Shown piece after piece: positions 1,063 through 64,000 of a stretch of DNA of 64,000 nt. Numbering within the stretch: position 1 is the first letter of the stretch; every line of letters starts with the position of its first letter. The stretch lies in the IMG/VR virus record IMGVR_UViG_3300042868_007959, positions 186,001 through 250,000 of that record; one strand, given 5' to 3'. The position numbers and the translations under genes are program-made. Below the pieces are notes generated by a model. The model was not told where the DNA came from. It saw only the letters and a list, made by a program, of their open reading frames with translations, and did no database searches.

Positions 1063-3231
1063 TTATACTATTTCTATTGGTTCAACAAGAACTTCTATTT
1101 TACCAAACATTTTATCTAATTCATTTTGATCGATAACTTTATTGGTATCTACATCATCATCAAAATCGTCTGGATCTACAATTATACCACCTTCTGATCC
1201 TGCATCAACTTCTCTTTTCTTATTCCAATACTCTGAACAAGTTTGATCTAATTTATTTTCTAAATCTACTAATTTCCCAACAGATAAAGGTTTCCCATCT
1301 ACACTTGTTTTAGGTAAAAATCCCGCTATTAATTCGTCAACTGTTGGGACTTTGGGGAATGCACCACCGACCAATGGGGTATTTCTTAAAAAATCACTTA
1401 TGTCTTTGAACCATTCATTATCTCTTTCTTTACCTTTAAATTGTTCATTAGTTTCTTTTTCAAAATTTTGTAAAGATTCCTTTAAGTATTTTATACGCTC
1501 TCTTAATTTTGTAGATTTACCTTCTTTATCATTACAAAAATCTTCAATTTCTTTTTGATTCCATGAGGCAATATTTACTATATTATTATATTCTACACTA
1601 AATTCTTCTAATGCCGTCATATATTCATCTTTTTTATTAAAAAAAGCGTCTACTTTTTGGTTACATTCACTTATACAACTATTAGTATTAGCATTACCAT
1701 AACCGAATTTACTTTCACATTTTGATCTACATCTAGCGTAACCAATTTTCCTTAAATTTTCTAAATCTCTTTTAACAGATTTCAGTGGTTCTACTACTAA
1801 AAATCCTAAAGGATGATACTTCCATAGTTTACTATTACCATAATCGGCACCTGCAGTCATTATTAAGGATTCTGAATCAGGTAAACTACCTCTTTGGGTT
1901 GATACATAAATTTCATTTAAACTAATTAAAGCGACTTGTTCTACCACAATTATTCTAAGGACATCTTCTATATTTTTCATTCTTTTACCTGACCAACCTT
2001 CAGCATTTTTAGGCATGTTATAGTCAACAAAACTAAATCTTTTATTACTATATAACTTTTTTCCTGAAGTAAGAAAACGAACCACTTTTAAACTTTCAGA
2101 TATTGTTGGGAATATATATCTAAAAGTTTGTCCTAGTTTATCGTTAATTTTACCCGCAAAATTATTTTTTGGGGTATTGTCTACAATTGTTTTTTGTATT
2201 ATTGGGTTTTCACCACTAGTTGGATCTACGTCAAAGTCTTTAATAGGACTCGATGGTGGAGTAACATCTATAGGTTTTAAATTTTTCTGACTAATTAAAT
2301 TTAAATTATCATCAAATATCAATTCAAACCCCTCAACAATATTAACACTTCTATAACCACCATTTGGTAATTTTACTATTAATACTTTCCCACCGTCAAT
2401 TTCTTTTGCTAATCCTTCAGGTGTAATACTTCTCCCTTTTCCGTCACCTAAATTTTTAAGTGCTCGTTCAATAGCATCTATTATTTCACCTTTTATTACA
2501 TCAGGATTACCATTCGCATTTATTTCATCTGTTGTTGCTTTAGTTGGTCCAGCAGAAGAACCACCATCAACACCATCATAATAGTCATTTACTTCCTTAC
2601 TAGCACTATTAGGATCATATGTATCATCTTTTTTAATATTATCACCTTCTATTTTATAAGTTTCTATTTTTTCTTTACCACCCACAGTCTCTACTTTATG
2701 AACAACATTTTCACCTGTATTAGATTTAGTAACTATGGTAGTTTTAGATTTAGTTTTTGGTGGTGTATATTTACCTTTACTTTCTTTCCATAAATCAAAT
2801 ACCATACCTCTTAAATCACCTTCAGCGGGTAAATCATTTATCACCTGTAAGATTAATTTATCATCCGCAGTTTTTAAGAATCCACTATCTGACCATTTTT
2901 TAAATGATAAAATTGCGTCATTTGCGTAATCCCAGTTAATGCCCATAGATCTCCATAAAGATTTATAGTCGTTTAAATGTCTAGCTAAATCATCAAAAGT
3001 ATTAATTTCGGCATTTAAAAAATTAGTTGCAAGTTTTGGGTCAACATTTTTAATAGCTTTTGCAACTGAAGAACTAGCCGTCTCTAATGCATCAGATAAT
3101 CTTCTACCAATACCTTGTTCAGTTAATAGTTTATTTTCTTTTAAATTACCATATAATCTTTCCTCAGTAAATAAAGATTTAATTCTCTTCATTTCTTCAT
3201 TTAAATTATTATATTTTTTTTTCATATTCAT
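1063..3231 (-). CDS. Leader-bearing putative internal virion (ejected) protein, 722 aa; shares ~130-aa domain with 7636..10632
   Basis: LNEEMKRIKSLFTEERLYGNL leader, LLTE|QGIGRRL junction, Cys cluster CRSKC...CISEC. Confidence 0.6.
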   Translation of the reverse strand: MNMKKKYNNLNEEMKRIKSLFTEERLYGNLKENKLLTEQGIGRRLSDALETASSSVAKAIKNVDPKLATNFLNAEINTFDDLARHLNDYKSLWRSMGINWDYANDAILSFKKWSDSGFLKTADDKLILQVINDLPAEGDLRGMVFDLWKESKGKYTPPKTKSKTTIVTKSNTGENVVHKVETVGGKEKIETYKIEGDNIKKDDTYDPNSASKEVNDYYDGVDGGSSAGPTKATTDEINANGNPDVIKGEIIDAIERALKNLGDGKGRSITPEGLAKEIDGGKVLIVKLPNGGYRSVNIVEGFELIFDDNLNLISQKNLKPIDVTPPSSPIKDFDVDPTSGENPIIQKTIVDNTPKNNFAGKINDKLGQTFRYIFPTISESLKVVRFLTSGKKLYSNKRFSFVDYNMPKNAEGWSGKRMKNIEDVLRIIVVEQVALISLNEIYVSTQRGSLPDSESLIMTAGADYGNSKLWKYHPLGFLVVEPLKSVKRDLENLRKIGYARCRSKCESKFGYGNANTNSCISECNQKVDAFFNKKDEYMTALEEFSVEYNNIVNIASWNQKEIEDFCNDKEGKSTKLRERIKYLKESLQNFEKETNEQFKGKERDNEWFKDISDFLRNTPLVGGAFPKVPTVDELIAGFLPKTSVDGKPLSVGKLVDLENKLDQTCSEYWNKKREVDAGSEGGIIVDPDDFDDDVDTNKVIDQNELDKMFGKIEVLVEPIEIV
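2739..3120 (-). repeat. Dispersed coding repeat copy 1 (EQGIGRRL...KSK domain), paralogous to 10185..10563
   Basis: Long identical nucleotide runs, e.g. gcagtttttaagaatccactatctgaccatttttt in both copies. Confidence 0.9.
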
Positions 3232-3241
3232 ATATTTTATG

Positions 3242-3925
3242 TTAATGTTGTAATAATTTTAATATTTCTGTTTTATCCATACCCTTATTGAGAACATTAC
3301 CATTAACAATATTACTACTATTTAGATAATAAGTAAGGACATCACCAAATTTTAATACACCTGAAGGTATATTCATAGAACTAGATTCACTACTACTAAT
3401 TGTCACATCTACTAAACTACCTGAACCATCTTTCTTTTTAAATGGTGAATTTTCCCAATCAGAGCTACCTCCTTTAAAAACACCTACATATTTAAAGGTA
3501 GAGGTTCCGCCTTTTATTTTGATGTCGGTACCATCACATTCGTATTTTGATCGGTACATTAATTTTTTACTACCATTTTCTGGATTTAATAAAAAAGTTA
3601 ATATTAATTGATTATCGGAATAAAATGTTAAATGAAAAGTAGGTATACCACTTGTTTTATAATTACTTTTAGCCAATACGAAACAATCTTCTACAGTATT
3701 ACCAGCAGAAGCAACAGATATTCTACCACTTACATCTGATAAAGCTTGTTTTGTACATTTTATATTGTCGTTACTATCACATATATTTTCAGATTCAGTA
3801 GGATTAAAAACTTTATATCCATTAGATTCTAAATCTTCCTCACATTGTTCTAAATCTCCACCACATTGTTCTTTAAGCAACATTAAAGTTTTAATTCTAT
3901 TTAATTGCTCCGTTAAGTTCTTCAT
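3242..3925 (-). CDS. Leader-bearing putative internal virion protein, Cys-rich
   Basis: MKNLTEQLNRIKTLMLLKE|QCGG; six Cys. Confidence 0.6.
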   Translation of the reverse strand: MKNLTEQLNRIKTLMLLKEQCGGDLEQCEEDLESNGYKVFNPTESENICDSNDNIKCTKQALSDVSGRISVASAGNTVEDCFVLAKSNYKTSGIPTFHLTFYSDNQLILTFLLNPENGSKKLMYRSKYECDGTDIKIKGGTSTFKYVGVFKGGSSDWENSPFKKKDGSGSLVDVTISSSESSSMNIPSGVLKFGDVLTYYLNSSNIVNGNVLNKGMDKTEILKLLQH

Positions 3926-4085
3926 TAAATATTTTTTTTAATTCTTCTTTATATAATTGTATTTCTTCTTGTAAGATTTCAATACTCTCTTTATCATTTA
4001 TATTATAAATATTAAATAAATTATTAATTTCATCTAATCTATTTTTTATAATATCTATTCTTTCTTGTATTTCTAAAACTATCAT
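3897..4085 (-). CDS. Small acidic coiled-coil hypothetical protein
   Basis: ATGA overlap with the upstream stop; fills the gap in the operon. Confidence 0.5.
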   Translation of the reverse strand: MIVLEIQERIDIIKNRLDEINNLFNIYNINDKESIEILQEEIQLYKEELKKIFNEELNGAIK

Positions 4086-5920
4086 TTTTGATTTTTTAAA
4101 TAATCCTCTTGTTGTTGATTTAATAAATCTATTGCATCCGATCCTTTTTTACCGTCATCTACACCAGACACTGCATCCATCTCTTCTTTATTATCAACGT
4201 ATCTAACATTATCTTTTCTATTCTTTTCATCGGTAGGTGCCATTTCTATATTAGATACTTCTTTACCACTTATACTTTTATTCATTAAATCAGAAGTTTG
4301 TGTAGATAACCAATCCTTAAATTTTTTAGTTTGAAATTTAGGGTTATTTAGTAACCACTCTCTTGATTTTTTTATATCGTCTTCAGTTGGTATTTCTTCA
4401 CTTTTTGTCCAAGGTCTCCATCCTTTAGTATAAGCGTTATTAAGTAATGTATTATCTGTAATTGATCCATCAGAAAGAAATATTTCTTTAGTAGACTTCC
4501 AGTCATAACCATCATTTTTAATATTAGTTTGCACAGTTGGTTTAAGAGAATGTTGTACTAAATTAATTTTATCCGATAACCATTTAGCTACTTCAGGTTC
4601 ACTTAAAACCTCTGATAATATAACATACATACCTAACTCTTGTAAAGCTTCTTTTCCTGCAATAGTTTTCATATACGCATTTAATGATGTAACTACATCA
4701 CCATTATTTTGTAAAACTAAATTTTTAAAGTTTTTATTTTTTGAAACTGTAAGTAAGTTAGCCCTACCTACCCTACTTTCTATTTTTGTTAATGCGTCAC
4801 TGTAAATTTTTGCAGATTTAGGATCAATTTTAGCAAAATTATTAATTATATCGTGTCCGACTAATATCTCAGATTGATTAAGTCCGTATTTATCTGCAGT
4901 TTCTTTATAAATTTTTACTAATTTTTGATTTTTTACATCGGTTGATACATTTTTTAAAAGAGGTAATTCATTATCAACCCTTTTAATTACATCATCCGCA
5001 TACTTATAAACTTTAATATTTGCACTACCTTTAGTCAATATTCTATTAGTTTGACTAACACCTCCTCCTAAAAATCCACCAAAAAGTGTTAACCCACCAG
5101 CGAGTATAGCGGCATCTCTTTCTTCTTTTGTTTTCGCATTAAAAGCCTCGACACCATATGTAGAAGCATTCGCAAAATCTATTCCCGCACTTAACGCTAA
5201 CCCAACTCCTGGTATTGCTAGTACTGCAATAGAAGCGATATCCAAAGCACAATGATAGTCACTAAAACAATCCCCAATATACTCCCATACACTGGTAGAT
5301 TTTTCATATTGATTTAAAGTTCCCTTATTGTATGAAATATCATAACTAGCAATTTTTTGTATTCTGTTTTTTATTTGACTGTAATTATCTGACCCAAAAT
5401 ACTTAGTAAAAAAGTTCCACCAACCTTCAGGAAAATAAGACGACCTCCAAGCATTTTTATCATACTTAAAAGTTGCTTCTAATTCTTTTTGAATTTTTCC
5501 CCACTGAAAATAAATAGTATCATTATTTGCGATATCAGATGCTCTCTGTTTACCTATCATTTTATCCGATATTTGATCAGCCAAATCACTGAAATCTTTT
5601 GCAACATATAGTCCACCTCCCGCTGCCACATTACATGTACCTAATTCCGCTTTTGAAATACAAACATCATACATACCTTTGGTACCTGTAATTACTTTTT
5701 CAGCGATATAAACATTATTTAATTCCTTTATAGCATTTAATGCTGATTGAGCAAAAACATGATTGGCAGACAATGAACCACCTATTAAATAATTGGGCCA
5801 ACCATTACTTCTTAAAAAATTTTTAGTAGATTCAACCTCATTACTAATAGATGATTTAGTTTCTTCTTTTAAAAATATTCTTTTATATTGATTTTCCGTT
5901 ATGAAAATTTTTTTTTTCAT
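4082..5920 (-). CDS. Leader-bearing protein with pre-toxin-TG-like hydrophobic hairpin
   Basis: ITENQYKRIFLKE leader; ALDIASIAVLAIPGVGLALSAGIDFANASTYGVEA...AAILAGGLTLFGGFLGGG. Confidence 0.55.
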   Translation of the reverse strand: MKKKIFITENQYKRIFLKEETKSSISNEVESTKNFLRSNGWPNYLIGGSLSANHVFAQSALNAIKELNNVYIAEKVITGTKGMYDVCISKAELGTCNVAAGGGLYVAKDFSDLADQISDKMIGKQRASDIANNDTIYFQWGKIQKELEATFKYDKNAWRSSYFPEGWWNFFTKYFGSDNYSQIKNRIQKIASYDISYNKGTLNQYEKSTSVWEYIGDCFSDYHCALDIASIAVLAIPGVGLALSAGIDFANASTYGVEAFNAKTKEERDAAILAGGLTLFGGFLGGGVSQTNRILTKGSANIKVYKYADDVIKRVDNELPLLKNVSTDVKNQKLVKIYKETADKYGLNQSEILVGHDIINNFAKIDPKSAKIYSDALTKIESRVGRANLLTVSKNKNFKNLVLQNNGDVVTSLNAYMKTIAGKEALQELGMYVILSEVLSEPEVAKWLSDKINLVQHSLKPTVQTNIKNDGYDWKSTKEIFLSDGSITDNTLLNNAYTKGWRPWTKSEEIPTEDDIKKSREWLLNNPKFQTKKFKDWLSTQTSDLMNKSISGKEVSNIEMAPTDEKNRKDNVRYVDNKEEMDAVSGVDDGKKGSDAIDLLNQQQEDYLKNQK

Positions 5921-5931
5921 ATTACTATTAG

Positions 5932-6972
5932 TTATTTAACTTTTGGTTCGACTCTAAATGTACAATCATTAAGATTATTATCTGCATCTATAATTGTAAT
6001 ATTATGTTCCGATGGTTTTAAATTTAATGTAGTATATACCGCATTAAGTGAATCTGATCTAAAACTAATTTTTATTTTCCCGTTTTGAGGATTTTCTTTT
6101 TTCTGCATAAAAGTATAACCTCTTTCACCATTAAATTTATATTGGTTTCCTGTAATTTTCTTTATTTTACCAATTACCCTACCTCTAGTATCTTTGACAT
6201 CATATTTTTGACCTTCTACTCCTTTTGAAACTGAGGCTTCCCCACTTCTATAATCAGATATATATTTATTCTCCTCAAATGAAGATATCATAGTCATAAG
6301 TTTTTCATTACCCTCAAATTTATTATAGAAATTAGCCATACATCTCTCTACAGTTTTATATGCATCTGGATCAAACCCAAATTCTTCTAAATCTCCAGGA
6401 CCAGCCCCTTTAGACCAAGCTTTATACATTGCTTTAAGATGTTCTTTACAACTATCTATATTATTGCTAATATCTTTTCTATCTACTTTTACGTCAGTTT
6501 TAATATCTTTTTTGATACCTTTACCTTCTTTTTTGGACATAAACTGTAATTCCGCATCTTTTGTAATATAAATTTCTACGGGTGTACCACTATCATCATT
6601 AACTCTTTTTTTAACATAATACATATCTTTACCTGGTTTTGGTCTAGATACTGTCCCTAACTTCAATTTAATGTCAACAAATGACATTCTTTTCACATAA
6701 GTCTTTCCACCAATAACTTTTTGTTCATAGAAATCTAATGAATCACTTTCACTCCCTTCTATTTCTTTTTTCTTTTCATCTGTTAATTCAACAAATCCTT
6801 CAGGAATGTTCGGATTAGGTTTACCATCATCCTTTTTACCATCATCCTTCTTATCATCATCAACTGGTTTATCATCCTCACCTTCTACTAAATTCCCAAA
6901 CAATCTCTCTTCAGTAAATAAAGATTTCATTCTCAGTATTTGTTCATTTAAATTTAAAATATTTTTTCCCAT
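5932..6972 (-). CDS. Leader-bearing putative internal virion protein
   Basis: LNEQILRMKSLFTEERLFGNLVE leader nearly identical to that of 1063..3231, then a D/K-rich linker; late motif at 7005-7012. Confidence 0.6.
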   Translation of the reverse strand: MGKNILNLNEQILRMKSLFTEERLFGNLVEGEDDKPVDDDKKDDGKKDDGKPNPNIPEGFVELTDEKKKEIEGSESDSLDFYEQKVIGGKTYVKRMSFVDIKLKLGTVSRPKPGKDMYYVKKRVNDDSGTPVEIYITKDAELQFMSKKEGKGIKKDIKTDVKVDRKDISNNIDSCKEHLKAMYKAWSKGAGPGDLEEFGFDPDAYKTVERCMANFYNKFEGNEKLMTMISSFEENKYISDYRSGEASVSKGVEGQKYDVKDTRGRVIGKIKKITGNQYKFNGERGYTFMQKKENPQNGKIKISFRSDSLNAVYTTLNLKPSEHNITIIDADNNLNDCTFRVEPKVK

Positions 6973-7075: not shown

Positions 7076-7564
7076 TTAGAATACACTTATTGCTCTATCA
7101 AAACGAAGTGTTGCAGTAATATCTGCCAAATCAGAAGATGAATAATCTAATGACCCAAAGTCCACATCGTTTAATTGTGTCCCTTGTAAAATCCATTTTT
7201 GAACCACTACACCTGTTGGGTCTAACATCTCTAACTCTATGTCTTTCTTATAACCTGCAGCATAACCTTGTCTACCTGTTACAGATTCAGAGTGTAAACG
7301 AACCCACTCCATTAACGCCTGAGTCGCAGAAGGACCAATAGGGTCTCTAAAAGTTACAGAGATTGATTCCCAGTTAAATCTACCAATTACATATGTAGAA
7401 GTATTTAAAAAAGGTATCTCCACCTCTTGACTCGTATATTTTGGTCGGCTAGTTGTAGATACCCACCATTCTTGAATTCCCAATTCATCTGGAAATCTCA
7501 AAATAAACCTATTCTTTCTTAGCGGTTCGTAAGGAACAGGCATTCTCATTAATAAATCAGCCAT
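7076..7564 (-). CDS. gp19: Tail tube protein (T4 gp19-like)
   Basis: EPLRKNRF, GRFNWESISVTFRD, YKKDIELEMLDPTG, W.LQG, L.FD; near sheath gene. Confidence 0.9.
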   Translation of the reverse strand: MADLLMRMPVPYEPLRKNRFILRFPDELGIQEWWVSTTSRPKYTSQEVEIPFLNTSTYVIGRFNWESISVTFRDPIGPSATQALMEWVRLHSESVTGRQGYAAGYKKDIELEMLDPTGVVVQKWILQGTQLNDVDFGSLDYSSSDLADITATLRFDRAISVF

Positions 7565-7635: not shown

Positions 7636-10632
7636 TTATTTTTCAATAATAATTCTTTTCTTTTTAGGGTTATTTGGGTCAGATGTATCATACACATTAA
7701 AATGTATCTCTGGATATTTCACACTCAATTCTTTCCTTATTAAATTTTCAATAATCTCTATATTACTTAAATCGTCATCACTATAACCAACACTAATACC
7801 CTCAAAATCAGGGTTATCCTTTATTTCTTCAATTTGTTCTATAACTCTTTCCACAAAACTCCTAAACGCAATTTCTTTTCCTTTTTCGGGATTTGTACTT
7901 GATATATCTAAACCAAAACTATTTAAAAATTCTTTTGAAGATACTGGATGATAATCTTGTAATTTAAGATAATCATTTATTGATGTGTCTTTAAGGTTAC
8001 CCATCATTTTTTCTTTTTCACTATAAGAAAAGTTTTTATCTATTAATACTTTAATACCATCTATTAGTGACTGTGGTGAATTTGATCTGGCAGTAATGAT
8101 AGAGAAGTCATCTCCATTAATTAAAGCCTCTTTAAAATCATTAAAACTAGGTCCGTAACTTCTACTATCTATTGCATATTTAACATCTCTAATAAAAGAA
8201 TCGTACTCTCTAAAATCTTTAAACGCTTCTAATATGTCATTATTAATATATCTAAACTCATCACCTAATTTATGTCTAATAGATCTAAATTGTTCGGTAG
8301 AAACTGAAACAGGTACCCAATGTAATCCACCAACTTTATATTCTAAATGAATTCTTGTTGGCATTTTTAAAATATTATCATCCCAATCGAATGAATATGT
8401 TTTTTTGATTGATTCAGTTAAATAACTTTTTTTATATATAATAGATTCATTTTTGGGAGTTTCATTCTCATCATCGGTTAAACCACTAACAATAAATGGT
8501 AATAACGCTGGAAATCCAGCCTCAATCAACTTATAAGCTTGTCTATATAAATCCTTTTCAAGTTTTTTTGCTTGTTCAGGATAAATTTTTTTCCATTTAC
8601 GTTCTAATTTACCTAGTACATCAAAAAATTCTCTTGGTATATTATTAACCCAAGCATCAACATCTTTTAACTCATTTCCTAATTTAACTTGATCAGTAAC
8701 ATTTTTATTTAAAAATTTATCTATAAATGTTTTAAAATAATCTTTTATTTTTTCTACACCTGTTAGATTATTAATATTTGGTTTTTCTGCACTCAACATA
8801 GTTTTATATTTTTGTAAGTCAATATCTACTAATTTCTGAGATTTATTTGTCCCCCTTAAATAATCAACTAGAAAAGTTGCAAAACCTTTATTTTTTTCTA
8901 AAGTACCTAACTCCAACAAAGTTTTAATATTTGCAGTGAATTCCGCCTCAATTTCCTTAACATGACTCCAATAACTTAAATCACTTGCAGATTCTTTTAC
9001 AATCCTCTCAATTTCGGGTGTAGTTATATTATTCTCTATATATTTTAAAAATTGTCTATCATTTAAATTTTCTGTTTTGTTTTTTATTTTTTTATAATTA
9101 TCCCCAAACTCAGACCAACTATCAATTGATAATTTTAGAGATCTAATTTTAACATCGTTACCAAATAAATTTATATCAAACTTAGTAAGTGGGATTTTCA
9201 CTGTATCCTTACTTATATATTTTTCAGGTATAATTTTATTTTCTAAAGCCCATTTTTTGAATTCATGTACCCAACTGTAATCCTTACTAGTATCTATATT
9301 TTTTTCCACCCCAAATTGACTAACCGCCTTTTCAGCAGCGTCATTATCCTCTCTTTGCCATTGGAAAAAATCTGCGTTATCTACTTCCTCATTTTTTATG
9401 GGTGTCTTTTCTCTTTTACTTTTTAAATAATCCCAAGCCTCTTTCCCATCTACGAATTCGCTTGATTTATAAGTATTAAAACTATGATTACTTTTTTTTT
9501 GTATGACGTGTGTTAATTCATGATAAATCGTATGAAATATAGTATTTTTTAATTCTTCTAAATCTTTAGGATTTCTAGCTTTTTTTATTTCTTTTGTATT
9601 GATTATAACCCATTGACCCCAATTACCATTTATTTCATCTGCATACATTCTTACCCCTAAAGGAACATCGTATCTATAAACATACTTTTCTTTTAATTTA
9701 GGATCTTTTAATATTTTTTCATTTTTAACCCAGTCCTTTATATACGGTTTTTTATCCCAATCAGCATTTTCAAAAGTCTTATCATATTCCTCTTTATATA
9801 GATCAAATAATTTATCATCATCAATTTTTGCATTATTAAACTGCTCAGGACCTTTATCATTTAAAGAAAATTTTACGTTATCACCATTTATCTGTAATGT
9901 AACATAAATAGGTTCACCAGTATTTGTATCATACCCCCATTGATCCTCAAAACCATATTTTTTAAACGACGCATCTATAATATCCCACTCATCTTTTGGA
10001 ATATCAGATAATTTTAATCCAGATACTTGTTGTGGTATTTCTTTAGAATCTGTATCTAAATCTATTTTAGTATCGTCTATATTTGATAAATTACCTTCAT
10101 TATCTATAGTATAATTTTTTATCTCACCACCTTCAGTTTTTTGTACTATATTCTTACCACTTTTTTTATCTTTAACTACAATAGTTTGTGATTTAGGTTT
10201 CGTTGGTGAGTACGTACCTTTACTTTTTTTCCATAAATCAAAAACTATCCCCCTTAAATCTCCTTCAGTTGGTAAATCATTTATCACTTGTAAAATTAAA
10301 TTATCATCTGCAGTTTTTAAGAATCCACTATCTGACCATTTTTTGAAATTAATAACTGCCTTATTTGTGTAATCCCAGTCAATTCCTGTTGATTTCCATA
10401 AAGATTTATAGTCATTTAAATGTTTACCTAGATCATCAAAACTTTTTATTTCAGTATTTAAAAAATTAGTTGCAAGTTTTGGATCAACATTCTTAATAGC
10501 CTTAGCGACTGCGGAAGAACTATCTTCTAAAGCATCCACTAATCTTCTACCAATTCCTTGTTCAGAAATTAAATTATTATTTAAAAATTTTTTTAATTTT
10601 TTAATTTCCTTTTCTGAAAATAATTTACTCAT
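7636..10632 (-). CDS. Multidomain putative polyprotein: leader + shared N-domain + zincin metallopeptidase + C-terminal HAD-like phosphatase
   Basis: LISE|QGIGRRL; HELTH (9508-9522) with downstream EIEA; FDWDDN, ITAR, K, SDDD HAD motifs after an internal YLTE. Confidence 0.65.
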   Translation of the reverse strand: MSKLFSEKEIKKLKKFLNNNLISEQGIGRRLVDALEDSSSAVAKAIKNVDPKLATNFLNTEIKSFDDLGKHLNDYKSLWKSTGIDWDYTNKAVINFKKWSDSGFLKTADDNLILQVINDLPTEGDLRGIVFDLWKKSKGTYSPTKPKSQTIVVKDKKSGKNIVQKTEGGEIKNYTIDNEGNLSNIDDTKIDLDTDSKEIPQQVSGLKLSDIPKDEWDIIDASFKKYGFEDQWGYDTNTGEPIYVTLQINGDNVKFSLNDKGPEQFNNAKIDDDKLFDLYKEEYDKTFENADWDKKPYIKDWVKNEKILKDPKLKEKYVYRYDVPLGVRMYADEINGNWGQWVIINTKEIKKARNPKDLEELKNTIFHTIYHELTHVIQKKSNHSFNTYKSSEFVDGKEAWDYLKSKREKTPIKNEEVDNADFFQWQREDNDAAEKAVSQFGVEKNIDTSKDYSWVHEFKKWALENKIIPEKYISKDTVKIPLTKFDINLFGNDVKIRSLKLSIDSWSEFGDNYKKIKNKTENLNDRQFLKYIENNITTPEIERIVKESASDLSYWSHVKEIEAEFTANIKTLLELGTLEKNKGFATFLVDYLRGTNKSQKLVDIDLQKYKTMLSAEKPNINNLTGVEKIKDYFKTFIDKFLNKNVTDQVKLGNELKDVDAWVNNIPREFFDVLGKLERKWKKIYPEQAKKLEKDLYRQAYKLIEAGFPALLPFIVSGLTDDENETPKNESIIYKKSYLTESIKKTYSFDWDDNILKMPTRIHLEYKVGGLHWVPVSVSTEQFRSIRHKLGDEFRYINNDILEAFKDFREYDSFIRDVKYAIDSRSYGPSFNDFKEALINGDDFSIITARSNSPQSLIDGIKVLIDKNFSYSEKEKMMGNLKDTSINDYLKLQDYHPVSSKEFLNSFGLDISSTNPEKGKEIAFRSFVERVIEQIEEIKDNPDFEGISVGYSDDDLSNIEIIENLIRKELSVKYPEIHFNVYDTSDPNNPKKKRIIIEK
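10185..10563 (-). repeat. Dispersed coding repeat copy 2, paralogous to 2739..3120
   Basis: Direct nucleotide and protein comparison. Confidence 0.9.
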
Positions 10633-10709: not shown

Positions 10710-10740
10710 TTTGTATATTCAAAAAATAATTATATATTTG
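10710..10740 (+). promoter_or_regulatory. Bacteroidota-type sigma-A promoter (-33 TTTG / -7 TATATTTG)
   Basis: tttg at 10710-10713 and tatatttg at 10733-10740, 15 nt before ATG 10756. Confidence 0.7.
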
Positions 10741-10755
10741 TTTAAAATAACTGAT

Positions 10756-11097
10756 ATGTGTAAAATTAAAAAAGAAGCCGAACAATATAAAGATTCGTCA
10801 ACATCTAAATTAAAAAGGGTTATTATTAATTATAAATTTCTATCCTTCTCTAATACAAAAAATTTTAATTTTGTAATTACACTACTTTTTATTTTGATAC
10901 CATTTTTTTTAATGTCAAAAATAACTGTTTTTACATTATCATTAGTTATTGTTTCACATTATTTCATTTTCTGTAAATATCTTTATGAAAAGAAAAAATG
11001 GAAAATGGTTAGTGATGAAGAAAAAAATGAAATAGATGAAATCATTATAATATTAGAATCTTACTTAGAAGATAGAAAAAACAAAAAACCCCTATAA
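10756..11097 (+). CDS. Small two-TM membrane protein (early, moron-like)
   Basis: Two hydrophobic helices FVITLLFILIPFFLM and VFTLSLVIVSHYFIFC; start moved to the ATG downstream of the promoter. Confidence 0.65.
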   Translation: MCKIKKEAEQYKDSSTSKLKRVIINYKFLSFSNTKNFNFVITLLFILIPFFLMSKITVFTLSLVIVSHYFIFCKYLYEKKKWKMVSDEEKNEIDEIIIILESYLEDRKNKKPL

Positions 11098-11121: not shown

Positions 11122-11712
11122 TTATCTTCCTGTTCTTCCGTATTGTCTTGATCTTCCTTTGAAAGCCAATGCTAATCCTGCTGCAACCATAGCCAACGAT
11201 ATTGGTCCACCATAATTTCCTGCTCCAGCCATTTCTACGAAATCATGAATTTTTGTAGTCAACTCAAATTCTGACCAACCAGTTATATTTCCAAGTGCAG
11301 TGATTGCTCCCGATAAAGCTAAACCAGCTCCACCACCCATCATTGCTTTCTCACCGAATGCAGCATTTCTACCACCCATTCTTCTTGGTGTGTCTTCATT
11401 TTCTCTAATTCTTCTTTCAGACATACGACCAGAATTTGGTTCATTTACCTTTCTTTCTAACATTCTAGATTCCTCTGGTGTTAATTCGGGTAAAATTTCT
11501 TCTTTAAAGAAGTCTGAAATTAAATCAACAACTTCACTTTTAGATAATTCACCACCTTCTAAATCATTAAGATCATCATTAGAATATTTCGATAAATTTA
11601 AATTACCGTATGTTGGGTGAACATCATCCATTCCACCCATATCCTCTTTAATAACTCTTTTGACTATTCTTCTTAAATCAGTCTCAGTTAATCTTACTAT
11701 TCTTTTTGCCAT
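11122..11712 (-). CDS. Leader-bearing protein with C-terminal Gly/Ala-rich hydrophobic hairpin
   Basis: LTETDLRRIVKRVIKE leader; GGGAGLALSGAITALG and GGPISLAMVAAGLALAF. Confidence 0.6.
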   Translation of the reverse strand: MAKRIVRLTETDLRRIVKRVIKEDMGGMDDVHPTYGNLNLSKYSNDDLNDLEGGELSKSEVVDLISDFFKEEILPELTPEESRMLERKVNEPNSGRMSERRIRENEDTPRRMGGRNAAFGEKAMMGGGAGLALSGAITALGNITGWSEFELTTKIHDFVEMAGAGNYGGPISLAMVAAGLALAFKGRSRQYGRTGR

Positions 11713-11736
11713 TTTGTAAAATATTTTTTATTTTTA

Positions 11737-12021
11737 TTAGGATTGTACTCCTGAATTTTGTTTGTCTTTAAGACAATTTAGTGCTGCAATAGCTTTCATA
11801 CCTTCACCCATAGGATCCTTAAGTATTATTCCCCCAATTTCCTTAACACATTTAGTATAATCTCCTGTTGTACAAGACATAGGTGCTTTAATACCTGCAT
11901 CCTCACAACATTTCACTAAATCTTCTTTTGGATCTGATTCTTCCTTCAAAAGTTTGTTTACGATTCTCTTCATATCTGATTCAGACAAAGTTATCGTTTT
12001 ACCGTTTTTTCTAATTTTCAT
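11737..12021 (-). CDS. Small leader-bearing Cys-rich protein
   Basis: LSESDMKRIVNKLLKE leader; five Cys in the remaining ~65 aa. Confidence 0.6.
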   Translation of the reverse strand: MKIRKNGKTITLSESDMKRIVNKLLKEESDPKEDLVKCCEDAGIKAPMSCTTGDYTKCVKEIGGIILKDPMGEGMKAIAALNCLKDKQNSGVQS

Positions 12022-12073: not shown

Positions 12074-14923
12074 TTAAATGTTATCAAAACTAGCACCTGT
12101 GTTAGTGATATTAAATTCTATCGAAATAAATTCTAATGATCTAGTTGGTTTGATAAATATTCTTCCGTTTAATTCGTTTCTGTCAATAGATTCTGGTGTA
12201 TCATCTAATGTTACTCTAAAATCAGTTAACCCTCTTTCTTTTCTGATATTATCTAATATTGGATTAACTAAACTTAAGAACTGATTTCTTACAACATCAT
12301 CATTTTGTTCAAACAACAATCTGATAGATACTGCGGATATAAGTTTTCTAGCTTGTAGTAACAATCTTCTAACGTTAATTCTGTTAAGAGCACTTTCTCT
12401 AACTTGTAATGTTTTATTACCAAAGATAACAACCCCTACATCAGAGAATGTCGCCATAGGATTAATTCTACCTTCATATAAATTATCTCTTTCGTCTAAT
12501 TTAAGTTTAACTCTAGCTTTAATTGCGGTAGTTGTACCTCTATTTAAACCTGCTGCTGCGAACCAAGGGAATGCAACATTATCAGTCAATGCGATGTTTC
12601 TTACAACTTCTACAGTTGGTGGTAACCAAACATATCTATTATTTTCTGAATCATTCATTTGTAACCAAGGCCAATATGTAGCGGAATAATTAGAATCTAT
12701 TCCTGAATCTTCTACAACACTAACTGCCTCTTCCGCTGACAATACAACCCCATCCACATCTACGTCAGGTGTGGTAATTATATATAGTGAATCCGCTCTA
12801 TCAGTTTCAACCATATCAACTGCATTTTCAATTAAACTTGTATTATCTCTCAAATCAATACCAGGTGTTGCAAATACATTTATATTTACCGCTTCTGGAT
12901 TATTAAATGTGTAAATACCATTTAAAAATGCGTAATAATCAGAAGTTATTCCGTCATCACCTTCACTAGTGACAAATGTATTAAATATTCCTTTACTTAA
13001 ACCTAAAATTCCTTTAGTTCCGTTTTTAACGTAATTATCACCATTAGTTCTTTTAGTTCTATATTCGTCCCATCCGTCCCATCCACCGTAAGGTGCGAAA
13101 GTGAATTTTCTAGACGCTATCTTTTCATATGGTCCACCTACTAATGATAAGTCAGTTGTAAATGCTGATATACCAACTTGTAAAGTAGGTACATAACTTA
13201 CACTACCTAAATCTATTAAAGAACCAGTTGCGTTCACATCTAAATGGAAACCATCCGTTCTACCTGTATATATACCGTCATTAACTGCATTTAATCCCTT
13301 ATAATCAAAGAAATCTTGATCCACTCCAATATCACTATTTAAACCTAAGTAAGTTTTTCTTAATTTAGATGTATTGAAATCTGAGTATTTAGTTTTATAT
13401 TCTATTTTTGGTGGTAACGCAGTTCTATTAGAACCAACATATGTTCTATTTAACACACCCTCAAATCCTGATGGGAAATGGTTACCTAAATCTGGATCGT
13501 TTCCGTCCCATAATTCAACCATAACACATTTACTTCTTAATGGAAATTCACCATCAATTGTACCAATTTTTCTTCCTATAAATCCAATAGAATTACTATC
13601 CATAGATAAAGAAGAATATTTCTCTATTACATTAGGGTTAGCGTCTGTATCGTTAAAACTTCTAATTAACAAATCAAATGTTTTATTATCAGGTTGAATG
13701 TTTATAATAGAGAACTTAATATCTTGATTTGCAGCATTACCGTCAGATATTGTTACAAACCTAAATAACCTTTGTAATGTTGACCCTACACCGATACCTT
13801 TAACTTCCGAAAGAACCCAAGGAGATAATGCAGTTTTCCAACCCTCTAAATAATTATTAAGGTTATTTGTAATTGTCCCACCTATTTCTACAAATGATGT
13901 ATCTAAACCTCTAACTTTACCTGCACTAATCAAATCTTCCAATACATTAGTATAGATTTCTTCTACCCATAATTCAGTTTCCTTATCTTGTGTAGATTGA
14001 CCGAATACTCTAGGTAAGAAATTCTTTTTAGTTCTATCCATAGAAACTTCATAGTTAAAGTTTACCCCATTGAATGTGGTACCAGTAATATTAAATGAAG
14101 CCAATGAGTTTGATGGTAATAATGATGTATTAGTCATTATTGTGTCAGTGGCACCTGTTACATCATATGTTAATGTTTCTGTCCCATCATAAGATCCTCT
14201 CGATCTTAAAGTAGCAATTACACTACCATCTATATCTGTATAACAAGTTGCAGTATAACTAACAACTGTACCACTTGTAGTTCCTGTTACAAATCCTGTA
14301 GAACCACTCCCTTTTGTAAGGACTGTCATATCAAATGTTGCCCCACTGAAATTACAACCATTTTTAACATAATATGGTGTAGTTACATTAATTGTGTCAC
14401 CAGTACTTAATAAACCTACTGATGTAAATAACCCATTAATTTGTCCATCCGCATATAATGCAGTTAAATTAGGATCATTAAATGTAATAGTAACAGGTAA
14501 TCCCGCAGTAGTTGCAGAATATGTTAATAGTAATGGGTAACTTGTTGTATTTGTAATACCAGTTGTAGTTGGATCCTCTGAAGAATCTAGTGTGATAGAC
14601 CACGCATTACCAGCTTTATATCCTGATAAACCTAAAACTCTACTAACATATAATTGATTAGTTTGAGATAGGAACGATTTTGCGATGTAATTTAATTCAT
14701 ATTTGTTAAAACCATTAGCTTTATATTTTTCGGGGTTTAGTCCACCAAAATAACTAATGAATTCACCGTAATTAGAGATGAATACAGGTTCAAAAGCTGG
14801 TCCTTTAGGTGTCTCACCTAATAGTCCCAACGTAGTAACCCCAACTTGTCTAGTTACGAATGTTAAGTCTTTTTCAGATGTGAACACACCTGGACTCACA
14901 AAAATTCTGTCTGTTGATGCCAT
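12074..14923 (-). CDS. gp18: Contractile tail sheath protein (T4 gp18-like)
   Basis: FVSPGVFTSEKD, GETPKGPAFEP, PWFAAAGLNRG, LYEGRINP, FGNKTL, RINVRRLL, FEQND, IKPTRSLEFI. Confidence 0.95.
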   Translation of the reverse strand: MASTDRIFVSPGVFTSEKDLTFVTRQVGVTTLGLLGETPKGPAFEPVFISNYGEFISYFGGLNPEKYKANGFNKYELNYIAKSFLSQTNQLYVSRVLGLSGYKAGNAWSITLDSSEDPTTTGITNTTSYPLLLTYSATTAGLPVTITFNDPNLTALYADGQINGLFTSVGLLSTGDTINVTTPYYVKNGCNFSGATFDMTVLTKGSGSTGFVTGTTSGTVVSYTATCYTDIDGSVIATLRSRGSYDGTETLTYDVTGATDTIMTNTSLLPSNSLASFNITGTTFNGVNFNYEVSMDRTKKNFLPRVFGQSTQDKETELWVEEIYTNVLEDLISAGKVRGLDTSFVEIGGTITNNLNNYLEGWKTALSPWVLSEVKGIGVGSTLQRLFRFVTISDGNAANQDIKFSIINIQPDNKTFDLLIRSFNDTDANPNVIEKYSSLSMDSNSIGFIGRKIGTIDGEFPLRSKCVMVELWDGNDPDLGNHFPSGFEGVLNRTYVGSNRTALPPKIEYKTKYSDFNTSKLRKTYLGLNSDIGVDQDFFDYKGLNAVNDGIYTGRTDGFHLDVNATGSLIDLGSVSYVPTLQVGISAFTTDLSLVGGPYEKIASRKFTFAPYGGWDGWDEYRTKRTNGDNYVKNGTKGILGLSKGIFNTFVTSEGDDGITSDYYAFLNGIYTFNNPEAVNINVFATPGIDLRDNTSLIENAVDMVETDRADSLYIITTPDVDVDGVVLSAEEAVSVVEDSGIDSNYSATYWPWLQMNDSENNRYVWLPPTVEVVRNIALTDNVAFPWFAAAGLNRGTTTAIKARVKLKLDERDNLYEGRINPMATFSDVGVVIFGNKTLQVRESALNRINVRRLLLQARKLISAVSIRLLFEQNDDVVRNQFLSLVNPILDNIRKERGLTDFRVTLDDTPESIDRNELNGRIFIKPTRSLEFISIEFNITNTGASFDNI

Positions 14924-62883: not shown

Positions 62884-64000
62884 TTATCTTAATTCGTTAA
62901 GATCAAAAGTTTGAACTCCATCAACAGTTACAGTTCCGTAGAATCTGTTGTTCACCATTTTCTTAGCGTATCTCGTCATGATACCTTTAGTTGGTGCAAA
63001 GTTAAACGGATTTTGTAATGTAGGTGTCAATTGTAGAGGTACATACGGTGCGTAAATGTATCCTGTATCTAACAATGATTTACCTTTGTGTCCAATAATG
63101 ATTGAGTTAGCTGGTGCATAAGGGTCTCTAAATACAGTATATCTACCACCTAATGAACCGATTTTCTCAATACCCATATTGTATTGGTCTTGCTCTGGAG
63201 AAGCGTTTGATACGTGGAAGTATTCTAAATCGTCAAAAATTGCTGATACCTCAGAAGATACAACGATAAAGTTAGCTCCACCTCTCAAAGTAGACTTATG
63301 AATTTGAGCAGATACTTGATTTACTTTTGTAATCAATGTCTGATTCCACTCTTTTTGAGTGTATGCGTTGAAACCACCACCGTTGTTAGCTCTCTTCCAA
63401 CCGTTGTAATCCCATCTCAATTGCCATGCTGCTCCTTTTCTTAAATCTCTTAAGATCTCTCTATCAATCTCAGCAGCTACCTGCTCAGACAATAAAGCCG
63501 TAAGTTCAGCTTCAGCATCGATGTTATGGAATGCACTAACGTCTTGTGCTAATTCAGGTGACCAAGTAGCTCTTAGTTTTCTTTCTGTAACCGATACAAC
63601 TACTTCATCCAATTCAAAAGATACTTCACCCATTTCTGTAGCGAATTCTAATGTTGCATATTGTGCCCAAGATACAGATAAATTTCCCCACTGTTCTGCC
63701 GTTGTAGCTGAAGTAGCACCTACATAACCATCGAAGTTTGAAGATGTACAATTGATACAAGCTGGGTGAGTTAAATCTAATTCGATTAATAAACATCCGT
63801 CAGGTTGACAAATATTAGTATAATCAACAATACCTCTACCATATTTTTGAGATACTAATCTGAATGGTACTACACCACCTGCAGCGATAATAGTTTTACC
63901 ATCTTTATCTAAGATAGCGTCATCACTAGTTACTGTTAAAGAAGCTAAGAAAGACTCAGTATCCATTTCGTTTCCGTCTGGTCCTGTCAATCTACCTGCA
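62884..64000 (-). CDS. gp23: Major capsid protein (T4 gp23-like), 5' part outside window
   Basis: RKLRATWSPELAQD..AFHNIDAEAEL...EIDREI, RGGANFIV.S, YAPYVPL, GIMTRYA. Confidence 0.97.
   Translation of the reverse strand, partial: AGRLTGPDGNEMDTESFLASLTVTSDDAILDKDGKTIIAAGGVVPFRLVSQKYGRGIVDYTNICQPDGCLLIELDLTHPACINCTSSNFDGYVGATSATTAEQWGNLSVSWAQYATLEFATEMGEVSFELDEVVVSVTERKLRATWSPELAQDVSAFHNIDAEAELTALLSEQVAAEIDREILRDLRKGAAWQLRWDYNGWKRANNGGGFNAYTQKEWNQTLITKVNQVSAQIHKSTLRGGANFIVVSSEVSAIFDDLEYFHVSNASPEQDQYNMGIEKIGSLGGRYTVFRDPYAPANSIIIGHKGKSLLDTGYIYAPYVPLQLTPTLQNPFNFAPTKGIMTRYAKKMVNNRFYGTVTVDGVQTFDLNELR

What the first reader, a model, noticed from the sequence alone, without database searches (positions are those of the whole stretch)
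7636..10632. Putative polyprotein: zincin protease plus HAD phosphatase separated by an internal protease site
Seen: HELTH (9508-9522) with a distal EIEA (8944-8955) forms a zincin signature. A hydrophobic end GFPALLPFIVSGL follows, then a linker KNESIIYKKSYLTE|S (LTE at 8413-8421), directly before a complete HAD domain (DWDDN, ITAR, K, SDDD). Inference: head maturation would release two enzymes from one packaged precursor, perhaps for host takeover or anti-defence. The gene lies between the sheath and tube genes, which are adjacent in T4.
Basis: partly seen in the sequence, partly recalled or inferred. Interest (0 to 1): 0.7.

Follow-up and report, generated by a model that had tools for sequence, protein, structure and literature searches.

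The report
Leader-tagged phage enzyme fusion, probably cleaved
A 998-residue gene between the tail sheath and tube genes of a large marine T4-like phage joins an HExxH (probably zinc-hydrolase) module to a HAD-type phosphatase through a conserved leader-like linker that ends in the T4 head-protease motif, so one precursor is probably cut into two enzymes, though no cleavage has been observed.

Summary
The ORF at 7636-10632(-) is intact and every motif is at the stated coordinates.

- **C-terminus (746-998).** It has a HAD fold with all four catalytic motifs invariant. The best structural matches are the T4 Pnkp 3'-phosphatase and many other HAD phosphatases. No Pfam model hits it.
- **Central module (~201-720).** This is a rare family with 17 representatives in 1.8 billion proteins. 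HExxHxxQ is invariant and E-x-E-A nearly so. The predicted three strands followed by a helix, and weak fold hits to M1, M48 and YbeY, suggest a zincin. That is not proven.
- **Linker.** More than 1,100 clusters of standalone HAD homologues carry a 15-residue N-terminal leader ending L-x-E. In the fusion that element sits in frame at the same distance from DWDDN.
- **Conservation of sites.** Of the 11 [LI]xE sites in the protein, only ISE24 (end of the N-terminal leader) and LTE740 are kept in all nine fusion orthologues.
- **Genome context.** The genome encodes a T4 gp21-type head protease, and at least 20 other ORFs carry the same leader.
- **Evolution.** Fusion arose at least twice.

Cleavage and virion packaging are inferred, not shown. 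I class this as a new variant of T4-style capsid-targeting and processing. Interest 0.6.

The parts
7636..10632 (-). Whole ORF, 998 aa plus stop (P0001)
   Evidence: Full-length orthologues at 51-93% identity are P0002-P0011.
10561..10632 (-). N-terminal leader, residues 1-24, ending L-I-S-E24 before Q25
   Evidence: The ISE/LNE/ITE/LLE site is conserved in 9 of 9 fusion orthologues. The 67%-identical module shared with the paralogue begins around this site; the alignment starts at residue 19. P0175 has a canonical leader at the same place.
10033..10560 (-). N-module, residues about 25-200. Function unknown. It is swappable.
   Evidence: 67% identical to residues 33-214 of the ORF at 1063..3231(-). 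About 29 clusters of roughly 720-aa proteins share it. P0012 and P0014 carry an unrelated module instead.
8473..10032 (-). Central module, residues about 201-720: HExxH family, probably a zincin-like metallohydrolase
   Evidence: Only 17 representatives in 1.84 billion proteins. Alignments A2 and A3. AF2 model with pLDDT 79 and pTM 0.71.
9508..9522 (-). HELTH, residues 371-375, followed by invariant Q378
   Evidence: Invariant in A2. It lies at the end of the predicted helix 358-377, which follows three strands at 318-344. It gives a 12.9-bit match to positions 63-77 of PF13699 eCIS_core.
8941..8955 (-). EIEAE, residues 560-564: candidate third metal ligand
   Evidence: E560 and E562 are at least 90% conserved. 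They lie at the start of the predicted helix 558-575. Their proximity to the His pair could not be measured.
8479..8517 (-). Conserved hydrophobic segment GFPALLPFIVSGL, residues 706-718
   Evidence: The YPALLPF core is conserved across the family, including members that lack the HAD domain. Low pLDDT.
8413..8451 (-). Internal leader-like element, residues 728-740 (N-E-S-I-I-Y-K-K-S-Y-L-T-E). The predicted scissile bond is E740|S741.
   Evidence: It aligns with the N-terminal leaders of standalone HAD proteins, and the Glu is invariant in 37 of 37. It is kept in 9 of 9 fusion orthologues. It lies in a stretch with pLDDT below 50 in both models. P0175 has a complete canonical leader here.
8400..8406 (-). 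Run of seven A just after the predicted cut site (codons K743, K744 and T745)
   Evidence: In relative L007 the homologous run is one base short of the in-frame length, which splits the gene into P0012 and P0046.
7639..8397 (-). HAD-fold phosphatase domain, residues 746-998
8374..8388 (-). HAD motif I, DWDDN (D749 nucleophile, D751)
   Evidence: Invariant in 37 sequences.
8086..8097 (-). HAD motif II, ITAR (T847)
   Evidence: Invariant.
7876..7878 (-). HAD motif III, K919
   Evidence: Invariant.
7771..7782 (-). HAD motif IV, SDDD (residues 951-954)
   Evidence: Invariant.
12074..14923 (-). Tail sheath gene, upstream border of the variable slot
   Evidence: phrog_23, E 9e-61.
7076..7564 (-). 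Tail tube gene, downstream border of the slot
   Evidence: phrog_4542, E 3e-26.
11122..12021 (-). Two further leader-bearing genes in the same slot (196 aa and 94 aa)
1063..6972 (-). Four leader-bearing genes downstream of the tube gene (346, 612, 227 and 722 aa)
62884..64000 (-). Major capsid protein gene. Its 5' end lies beyond the window. The N-terminal region contains L-L-N-E followed by S.
   Evidence: phrog_138, E 2.5e-51. N-terminus read from L016.

Best explanation
P0001 is a modular virion-cargo precursor of a large (over 254 kb) marine T4-like myophage. Its order is:
- a 24-residue N-terminal leader;
- a swappable N-module;
- a rare HExxH module that is probably a zincin-like metallohydrolase;
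- a disordered acidic linker carrying a leader-like element;
- a catalytically complete HAD-fold phosphatase.

The leader is an amphipathic helix of the form h-h-T/S-E-x-Q/D-h-x-K/R-h-h-x-E. It works like the T4 capsid-targeting sequence. It brings the protein into the prohead, and the gp21-type head protease removes it after L/I-x-E.

The fusion kept this element in frame between the two enzymes, so the same protease would also cut at LTE740|S741. That would give a product of about 83 kDa (residues 25-740) and a phosphatase of about 30 kDa (residues 741-998). Both would be stored in the virion and delivered at infection.

Shown here: the anatomy, the conservation, the HAD fold, the presence of the protease gene, the genome-wide leader family, and recurrent fusion. 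Inferred: head targeting, cleavage at both sites, zinc-peptidase activity, and delivery into the host.
For: 1. More than 1,100 clusters of standalone HAD homologues of about 272 aa each start with a 15-residue leader ending L/I-x-E, six residues before YSFDWDD.
2. In alignment A1 the fusion linker aligns with these leaders without shifting the Glu. E740 is invariant in 37 of 37 sequences and P3 is Leu in at least 90%.
3. Of the 11 [LI]xE sites, only 22-24 and 738-740 are kept in 9 of 9 fusion orthologues that diverge to 51% identity. Residues 738-740 lie in a stretch with pLDDT below 50.
4. P0175 is a fusion whose HAD domain nests in a different standalone clade. It carries a complete canonical leader internally (17.3 bits, i-E 6.5e-5) as well as one at its N-terminus.
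5. The genome encodes a T4-type head protease: Peptidase_S77 at 82 bits and phrog_207 at E 2e-39. It lies next to a scaffold-like gene and the capsid gene. The capsid protein's N-terminal region has L-N-E followed by S.
6. T4 gp21 cuts after L/I-X-E. A 10-residue CTS targets internal proteins and foreign fusions into heads. Alt is processed at its C-terminus as well (PMC9026906; PMC3012670).
7. At least 20 ORFs in this genome carry the leader, always at residues 1-11. They include an M23 peptidase and two PG_binding_1 proteins. The sheath, tube and fibre proteins lack it.
8. The leader is conserved on the neighbouring genes in relatives.
9. The first Met after the junction is M757, downstream of the nucleophile D749. 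An internal translation start would therefore give a dead enzyme.
Against: - No proteomic or biochemical data exist for this phage or any close relative.
- L/I-x-E is a three-residue motif, and in T4 many such sites are not cut.
- The P0001 linker is too diverged to score with the leader HMM, so its derivation rests on the MAFFT alignment and on spacing.
- Members of the family that lack the HAD domain already end in a similar N-E-S...h-x-E tail. The element may therefore be an old C-terminal feature whose role is unknown.
- The genes lie in the tail module rather than the head module, so loading into another compartment is not excluded.
- The zincin assignment lacks any significant sequence or fold match.
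Confidence: 0.5

Rival explanations
1. P0001 is an uncleaved multidomain ('polyvalent') virion protein. Only the N-terminal leader is removed, if anything is. The internal L-T-E element is a fossil of the gene fusion or a flexible tether, and the two enzymes act as one chain.
For: The motif is very short and is not enriched in the protein. Multidomain HExxH-plus-effector proteins with long linkers are common in contractile injection systems (PMC8213781). The P0001 linker no longer scores with the leader HMM.
Against: The N-E-S-I-x-Y-K-K-x-Y-[LI]-T-E core is more conserved than the acidic stretch before it, in orthologues down to 51% identity. The Glu is invariant in 37 of 37. An independent fusion kept an intact leader. 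The segment is predicted to be disordered and accessible.
Confidence: 0.22
2. The protein processes itself. The HExxH module cuts the linker in cis or in trans to release the phosphatase, as has been proposed for DUF4157-toxin proteins of extracellular contractile injection systems. The head protease is not involved.
For: The HExxHxxQ helix matches the hallmark of PF13699 eCIS_core. DUF4157 sits N-terminal to effector domains, and its suggested roles include toxin maturation.
Against: The match covers only 15 residues and scores 12.9 bits against a cut-off of 22. The template set was chosen by the motif itself. Standalone HAD proteins with no HExxH partner in their own chain keep the same leader and the same Glu. 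Relatives that lack the HAD domain keep the HExxH module.
Confidence: 0.1
3. The leader is not a capsid-targeting signal. It directs proteins to another virion compartment, such as the tail tube lumen or baseplate as in eCIS cargo loading, or it binds an assembly chaperone. P0001 would then be tail cargo.
For: The leader-bearing genes cluster between the sheath and tube genes and just downstream of the tube gene, in this genome and in relatives. eCIS payloads use N-terminal signals for loading into the tube (abstracts listed).
Against: Every leader ends in the T4 protease motif at a fixed distance, and a gp21 homologue is encoded. About 13 other leader-bearing genes lie far from the tail genes, at 3-5, 15-16, 24, 55-56, 63-65 and 111-115 kb. 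No eCIS-type loading ATPase was looked for.
Confidence: 0.15

Closest known systems
T4 internal proteins IPI, IPII and IPIII, and Alt (capsid-targeting sequence plus gp21 processing)
   Same: Both have a short N-terminal targeting propeptide ending in L/I-x-E. Both phages encode a gp21-family protease. In both, diverse unrelated mature domains, including enzymes, share only the leader. The cargo is presumed to be injected with the DNA.
   Different: The leader here is 15-24 residues rather than 10, with its own consensus. It tags at least 20 proteins of up to 998 aa. The genes sit in the tail module. One element lies internally between two enzyme domains. None of this has been verified experimentally.
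Multi-site head-protein processing in giant phages (phiKZ, 201phi2-1, SPN3US)
   Same: Many head or ejection proteins are cut after Glu at a minimal motif, sometimes at several sites per protein.
   Different: Those phages use S/A-x-E. No case is known to me of a retained leader joining two enzymes that also occur as separate genes. That last statement rests on my own knowledge and was not searched exhaustively.
DUF4157 / eCIS_core (PF13699) N-terminal HExxH domain of eCIS toxins
   Same: Both have the H-E-L-T-H-V-x-Q helix. In both the HExxH domain lies N-terminal to an effector-type enzyme with a long linker, in a locus of a contractile tail machine.
   Different: Only the motif helix aligns with confidence and the score is below the family cut-off. 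The module here is about 520 residues rather than 80. It is in a lytic-phage genome, not an eCIS.
T4 polynucleotide kinase-phosphatase, 3'-phosphatase domain (HAD DxDxT family)
   Different: Identity is 14-16%. There is no kinase domain. A cap of about 90 residues is inserted after motif I. Motif I reads DWDDN, with Asn in place of Thr/Val. The substrate is unknown.
Gluzincin metallopeptidases (M1 aminopeptidases, thermolysin-like)
   Different: The candidate Glu lies 185 residues after the second His, not 18-70. No significant sequence or fold match was found. Metal binding is untested.

Membership tests
HAD superfamily phosphatases | Motif I, DxDx(T/V), at the end of strand 1 (Asp nucleophile and Asp+2) | tested here: met
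   D749-W-D751-D-N753 is invariant in 37 sequences and lies at the end of predicted strand 745-749. Asn replaces the usual Thr/Val.
HAD superfamily phosphatases | Motif II Ser/Thr, motif III Lys, and motif IV acidic pair | tested here: met
   T847, K919 and D952/D953/D954 are invariant and lie at the ends of the predicted strands or on the expected helix.
HAD superfamily phosphatases | Rossmannoid HAD fold | tested here: met
HAD superfamily phosphatases | Match to a curated HAD sequence model | tested here: not met
   No HAD family was found in Pfam, NCBIfam or PHROGs, and none with the PDB profile search.
HAD superfamily phosphatases | Mg-dependent phosphatase activity | not testable with these tools
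   Needs an enzyme assay.
Zincin (HExxH) metallopeptidases | HExxH on an active-site helix that follows a beta-sheet | tested here: met
   H371, E372 and H375 are invariant. They lie in predicted helix 358-377, after strands 318-322, 326-333 and 338-344.
Zincin (HExxH) metallopeptidases | Third metal ligand positioned next to the His pair | tested here: inconclusive
   E560 and E562 are conserved on a later helix.
Zincin (HExxH) metallopeptidases | Recognisable zincin fold or sequence family | tested here: inconclusive
eCIS_core / DUF4157 (PF13699) | Score above the family's gathering threshold over the domain | tested here: not met
   12.9 bits against a cut-off of 22, covering profile positions 63-77 only. 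hhalign aligns 15 residues with confidence.
eCIS_core / DUF4157 (PF13699) | H-E-x-x-H-V-x-Q hallmark helix | tested here: met
   HELTHVIQ compared with HELTHVVQQ in 130 domains pulled from genomes.
T4-type CTS / gp21-processed head proteins | N-terminal propeptide ending in L/I-x-E | tested here: met
   L-I-S-E24 in P0001. The leader HMM hits occur only at residues 1-11 of 17-19 ORFs. L-x-E is invariant in the HAD leaders.
T4-type CTS / gp21-processed head proteins | gp21-family prohead protease encoded by the phage | tested here: met
   PF03420 at 82 bits, above the cut-off. phrog_207 at E 1.7e-39.
T4-type CTS / gp21-processed head proteins | Protein present in heads and cut at the predicted bonds | not testable with these tools
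   Needs virion proteomics or co-expression with the protease.

The most novel reading that the evidence does not exclude
The 15-24-residue leader is a portable virion-targeting and cleavage tag. It defines a whole 'injectome' of about 20 proteins per genome in an abundant clade of marine T4-like phages. Those proteins include peptidoglycan hydrolases, membrane-active proteins, HExxH enzymes and a phosphatase. Each cargo carries its own cleavable tag, so neighbouring cargo genes can fuse and split freely. Internal tags are still cut, which gives a true phage polyprotein strategy driven by the head protease.
Probability: 0.35. Interest if true: 0.75.

Novelty: new variant of a known kind. Interest (0 to 1): 0.6.

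Why it matters
If correct, a simple sequence tag would identify the proteins that an abundant and largely uncultured group of marine myophages packages and delivers into its hosts. That set is otherwise invisible to annotation. It would extend the T4 capsid-targeting and gp21 paradigm from a few small internal proteins to large enzymes and to polyprotein-like precursors. It would also explain why the interval between the sheath and tube genes is a variable cargo slot. Finally, it would supply a natural targeting and cleavage tag, and two enzyme families with no characterised members, for study.

Tried and rejected
- **Sequence models.** Pfam, NCBIfam and PHROGs on the whole protein and on each part gave nothing meaningful. 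The PHL domain (PF20474) hit one of 37 HAD homologues and is treated as spurious. The PDB profile search with A1 gave only a chance hit to GtgE.
- **Fold searches.** Foldseek against the PDB, Swiss-Prot, the AlphaFold DB clusters and BFVD gave no significant hit for either model.
- **LPD23 lead.** This polyvalent-protein domain came up in the ESM Atlas feature search. It has no match in the genome, so I dropped it.
- **P0012 plus P0046 as a natural split gene.** Rejected. The split is a one-base shortfall in a poly-A run of an otherwise identical fusion.
- **Leader-bearing 612-aa protein as the tape measure.** If it were, leaders would mean tail-lumen loading. This is unlikely, because close relatives with near-identical sheath and tube genes have 645-1186 aa at that position.
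- **Internal translation start for the HAD domain.** Rejected. The first Met is M757, after the nucleophile.
- **Relation to the second leader-bearing HExxH protein.** hhalign between the central family and the 303-aa protein found only the motif.
- **Literature search for the leader sequence.** Searching for the leader as text returned only noise.
- **The genome search 'relatives'.** This is not available for virus records.
- **Not done.** No complex prediction was run.
Full report
**Observation.** The ORF at 7636-10632 on the minus strand is intact and encodes 998 residues.
- HELTH is residues 371-375.
- EIEA is residues 560-563.
- GFPALLPFIVSGL is residues 706-718.
- LTE is residues 738-740.
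- DWDDN is residues 749-753.
- ITAR is residues 846-849.
- K919 and SDDD (residues 951-954) are present.

The flanking genes are a tail sheath (12074-14923) and a tail tube (7076-7564).

**Host element.** The window is bases 186001-250000 of a 253,879-bp viral contig estimated to be 78% complete. GC content is about 28%. The contig encodes a T4 gp21-type head maturation protease, matched by PF03420 at 82 bits and phrog_207 at E 2e-39. Next to it lie an acidic scaffold-like gene and a T4-type major capsid protein. The sheath protein is only about 30-38% identical to those of cultured T4-like phages of cyanobacteria, Pelagibacter, Methylophilales and Flavobacterium. Homologues come from marine and other metagenomes, including Tara samples.

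**Anatomy of the protein.** P0001 is modular.
- **N-module.** Residues 19-199 are 67% identical to the N-terminal part of another window ORF, 1063-3231(-), which is 722 aa. About 29 clusters of roughly 720-aa proteins share this module. In other orthologues (P0005, P0006, P0011, P0012, P0014) it is replaced by an unrelated module, while the rest stays 58-78% identical.
- **Central module.** Residues about 201-720 belong to a very small family. A full phmmer scan of 1.84 billion representatives found 17 proteins.
- **C-terminal domain.** Residues 746-998 occur mostly as a free-standing protein of about 272 aa. More than 1,100 clusters at 90% identity were found.

**The central module is probably, but not demonstrably, a zincin.**
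- H371, E372, H375 and Q378 are invariant in sequences that diverge to 27% identity.
- The AF2 model (pLDDT 79, pTM 0.71) places HExxH at the end of a helix that follows three beta-strands, which is the zincin arrangement. EIEA lies at the start of a later helix.
- No search gave a significant match.
- The helix H-E-L-T-H-V-I-Q resembles the hallmark of PF13699 (eCIS_core, DUF4157), which is the HExxH domain found N-terminal to toxins of extracellular contractile injection systems (PMC8213781).
- The family model scores only 12.9 bits, over 15 residues, against a cut-off of 22. hhalign against 130 DUF4157 domains aligns only that helix with confidence. The template set was selected by the motif itself, so this is a resemblance, not membership.
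- I could not measure whether E560 and E562 lie next to the His pair.

**The linker is the key result.**
- Every free-standing HAD homologue begins with a 15-residue leader of the form M-K-h-K-h-T-E-x-Q-x-x-L-L-x-E. Six residues further on comes Y-S-F-D-W-D-D.
- In alignment A1 the fusion's N-E-S-I-I-Y-K-K-S-Y-L-T-E lines up with these leaders. The final Glu (E740) is invariant in 37 of 37 sequences, and the residue two before it is Leu in at least 90%.
- This is the T4 gp21 recognition motif, L/I-X-E with the cut after Glu. The leaders resemble the 10-residue capsid-targeting sequence of the T4 internal proteins (PMC9026906; PMC3012670).
- P0001 contains 11 [LI]xE tripeptides, against 13 expected from its composition. 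Only two are conserved in all nine fusion orthologues: ISE24 at the end of the N-terminal leader, and LTE740.
- Residues 738-740 lie in a stretch with pLDDT below 50 in both models. The module shared with the paralogue begins around the first site; the BLASTP alignment starts at residue 19.
- P0175 is a distant fusion whose central module is about 29% identical. It has a full canonical leader both at its N-terminus and internally, directly before the HAD domain.
- In a quick ML tree of the HAD domains, P0175 nests in a different free-standing clade from the P0001-type fusions. Free-standing genes (P0045, P0047) also nest among the P0001-type fusions (support values were not printed). Fusion or fission therefore happened more than once.
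- Family members that lack the HAD domain already end in a similar N-E-S...h-x-E tail followed by 2-27 residues. This suggests an ancestral C-terminal pro-piece, and a possible site for recombination with the HAD gene's leader.

**The leader is a genome-wide feature.**
- At least 20 ORFs in the contig carry it. A leader HMM matched only at residues 1-11.
- In the window these ORFs are 1063-3231, 3242-3925, 4082-5920, 5932-6972, 11122-11712 and 11737-12021.
- Elsewhere they include a 751-aa protein with a Peptidase_M23 domain (E 2e-33), two proteins with PG_binding_1 domains, and a 303-aa protein with its own HExxH motif.
- The sheath, tube, fibre-like and capsid proteins do not carry the leader.
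- In relatives the interval between sheath and tube is a variable slot that is always filled with leader-bearing genes. L005 and L006 hold a free HAD plus two small genes. L004 holds the central-module protein without a HAD. L139 holds a HAD-only gene in an otherwise syntenic locus.

**Apparent split in one relative.** One relative appears to split the gene into P0012 and P0046. This is a one-base shortfall in the poly-A run immediately after the LTE-S-I codons. It is not an independent gene pair.

**Mechanism proposed.** The leader targets the precursor to the prohead, and the gp21 homologue removes it. The same enzyme cuts the retained internal element, releasing the HExxH protein and the phosphatase as separate virion cargo. 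Each cargo carries its own cleavable tag, so fused and separate gene arrangements would be functionally equivalent. That would explain the recurrent fusion. An internal translation start cannot replace cleavage, because the first Met (M757) lies after the catalytic Asp.

**Rivals.**
- The protein stays in one piece and the linker is a fossil.
- The HExxH module processes the precursor itself, as has been suggested for DUF4157.
- The leader loads another compartment, such as the tail.

None of these is excluded. The first is the most serious.

**Verdict.** The HAD call is right. The zincin call is plausible. The polyprotein idea gains substantial comparative support, but it remains untested. 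The closest known system is T4 CTS and gp21 processing of internal proteins and Alt. This is a new variant of that system.

Noticed in passing
window 1063-3231, 3242-3925, 4082-5920, 5932-6972, 11122-11712, 11737-12021 (all -). Also G000:C1 at 3.4-5.2, 15-16, 23.8, 54.9-56.1, 63-64.8 and 111.6-114.8 kb.: At least 20 ORFs share an N-terminal amphipathic leader in two sub-types. One reads roughly h-h-T/S-E-x-Q/D-h-x-K/R-h-h-x-E. The other reads roughly N-x-N-E-E-h-x-R-h-K-S-L-F-x-E-E followed by R-L-Y-G-N-L. The leader is always at the extreme N-terminus and is absent from the sheath, tube, fibre and capsid proteins.
   Followed up: partly
window 4082-5920(-) and 11122-11712(-): Two leader-bearing proteins (612 aa and 196 aa) contain Gly/Ala-rich hydrophobic stretches that look membrane-active. 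The equivalent gene in close relatives is 645-1186 aa, so it is unlikely to be a tape measure.
   Followed up: partly
G000:C1:111654-113909(-) and 113906-114817(-): A leader-bearing 751-aa protein has a C-terminal Peptidase_M23 domain (E 2e-33). The adjacent leader-bearing 303-aa protein has its own HExxH motif (H-E-F-M-H) and no family match.
   Followed up: partly
G000:C1:3469-4170(-) and 4413-5195(-): Two Cys-rich leader-bearing proteins carry PG_binding_1 domains (E about 6e-12). This suggests they act in the host cell envelope.
   Followed up: partly
L007:5255-5300, homologous to window 8398-8411: In one relative the fusion is interrupted by a one-base shortfall in a run of A directly after the predicted cleavage site. 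This could be a sequencing error, a real frameshift or a slippage-prone site. I could not tell which.
   Followed up: partly
window 10711-11097(+): A 128-aa ORF with hydrophobic segments lies on the opposite strand between two leader-bearing genes. A 127-aa gene occupies the same place and orientation in relative L139, so it is probably a real gene.
   Followed up: partly
L138 (LR745206.1:124617-125672): A 635-kb uncultured phage encodes a 351-aa HAD homologue (38% identical). It has a 10-residue N-terminal extension ending F-L-E, which recalls the T4 CTS, and a C-terminal extension of about 90 residues.
   Followed up: no
window 32001-34000, inside the 1714-aa ORF at 31292-36436(-): GC content rises to 0.42 against about 0.28 for the rest of the window.
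   Followed up: no
L016:3-641(-), continuing into window 62884-64000(-): The N-terminal region of the major capsid protein contains L-L-N-E followed by S about 60 residues in. As I recall, the T4 gp23 propeptide is cut at about that position. This is consistent with a T4-like protease specificity.
   Followed up: partly
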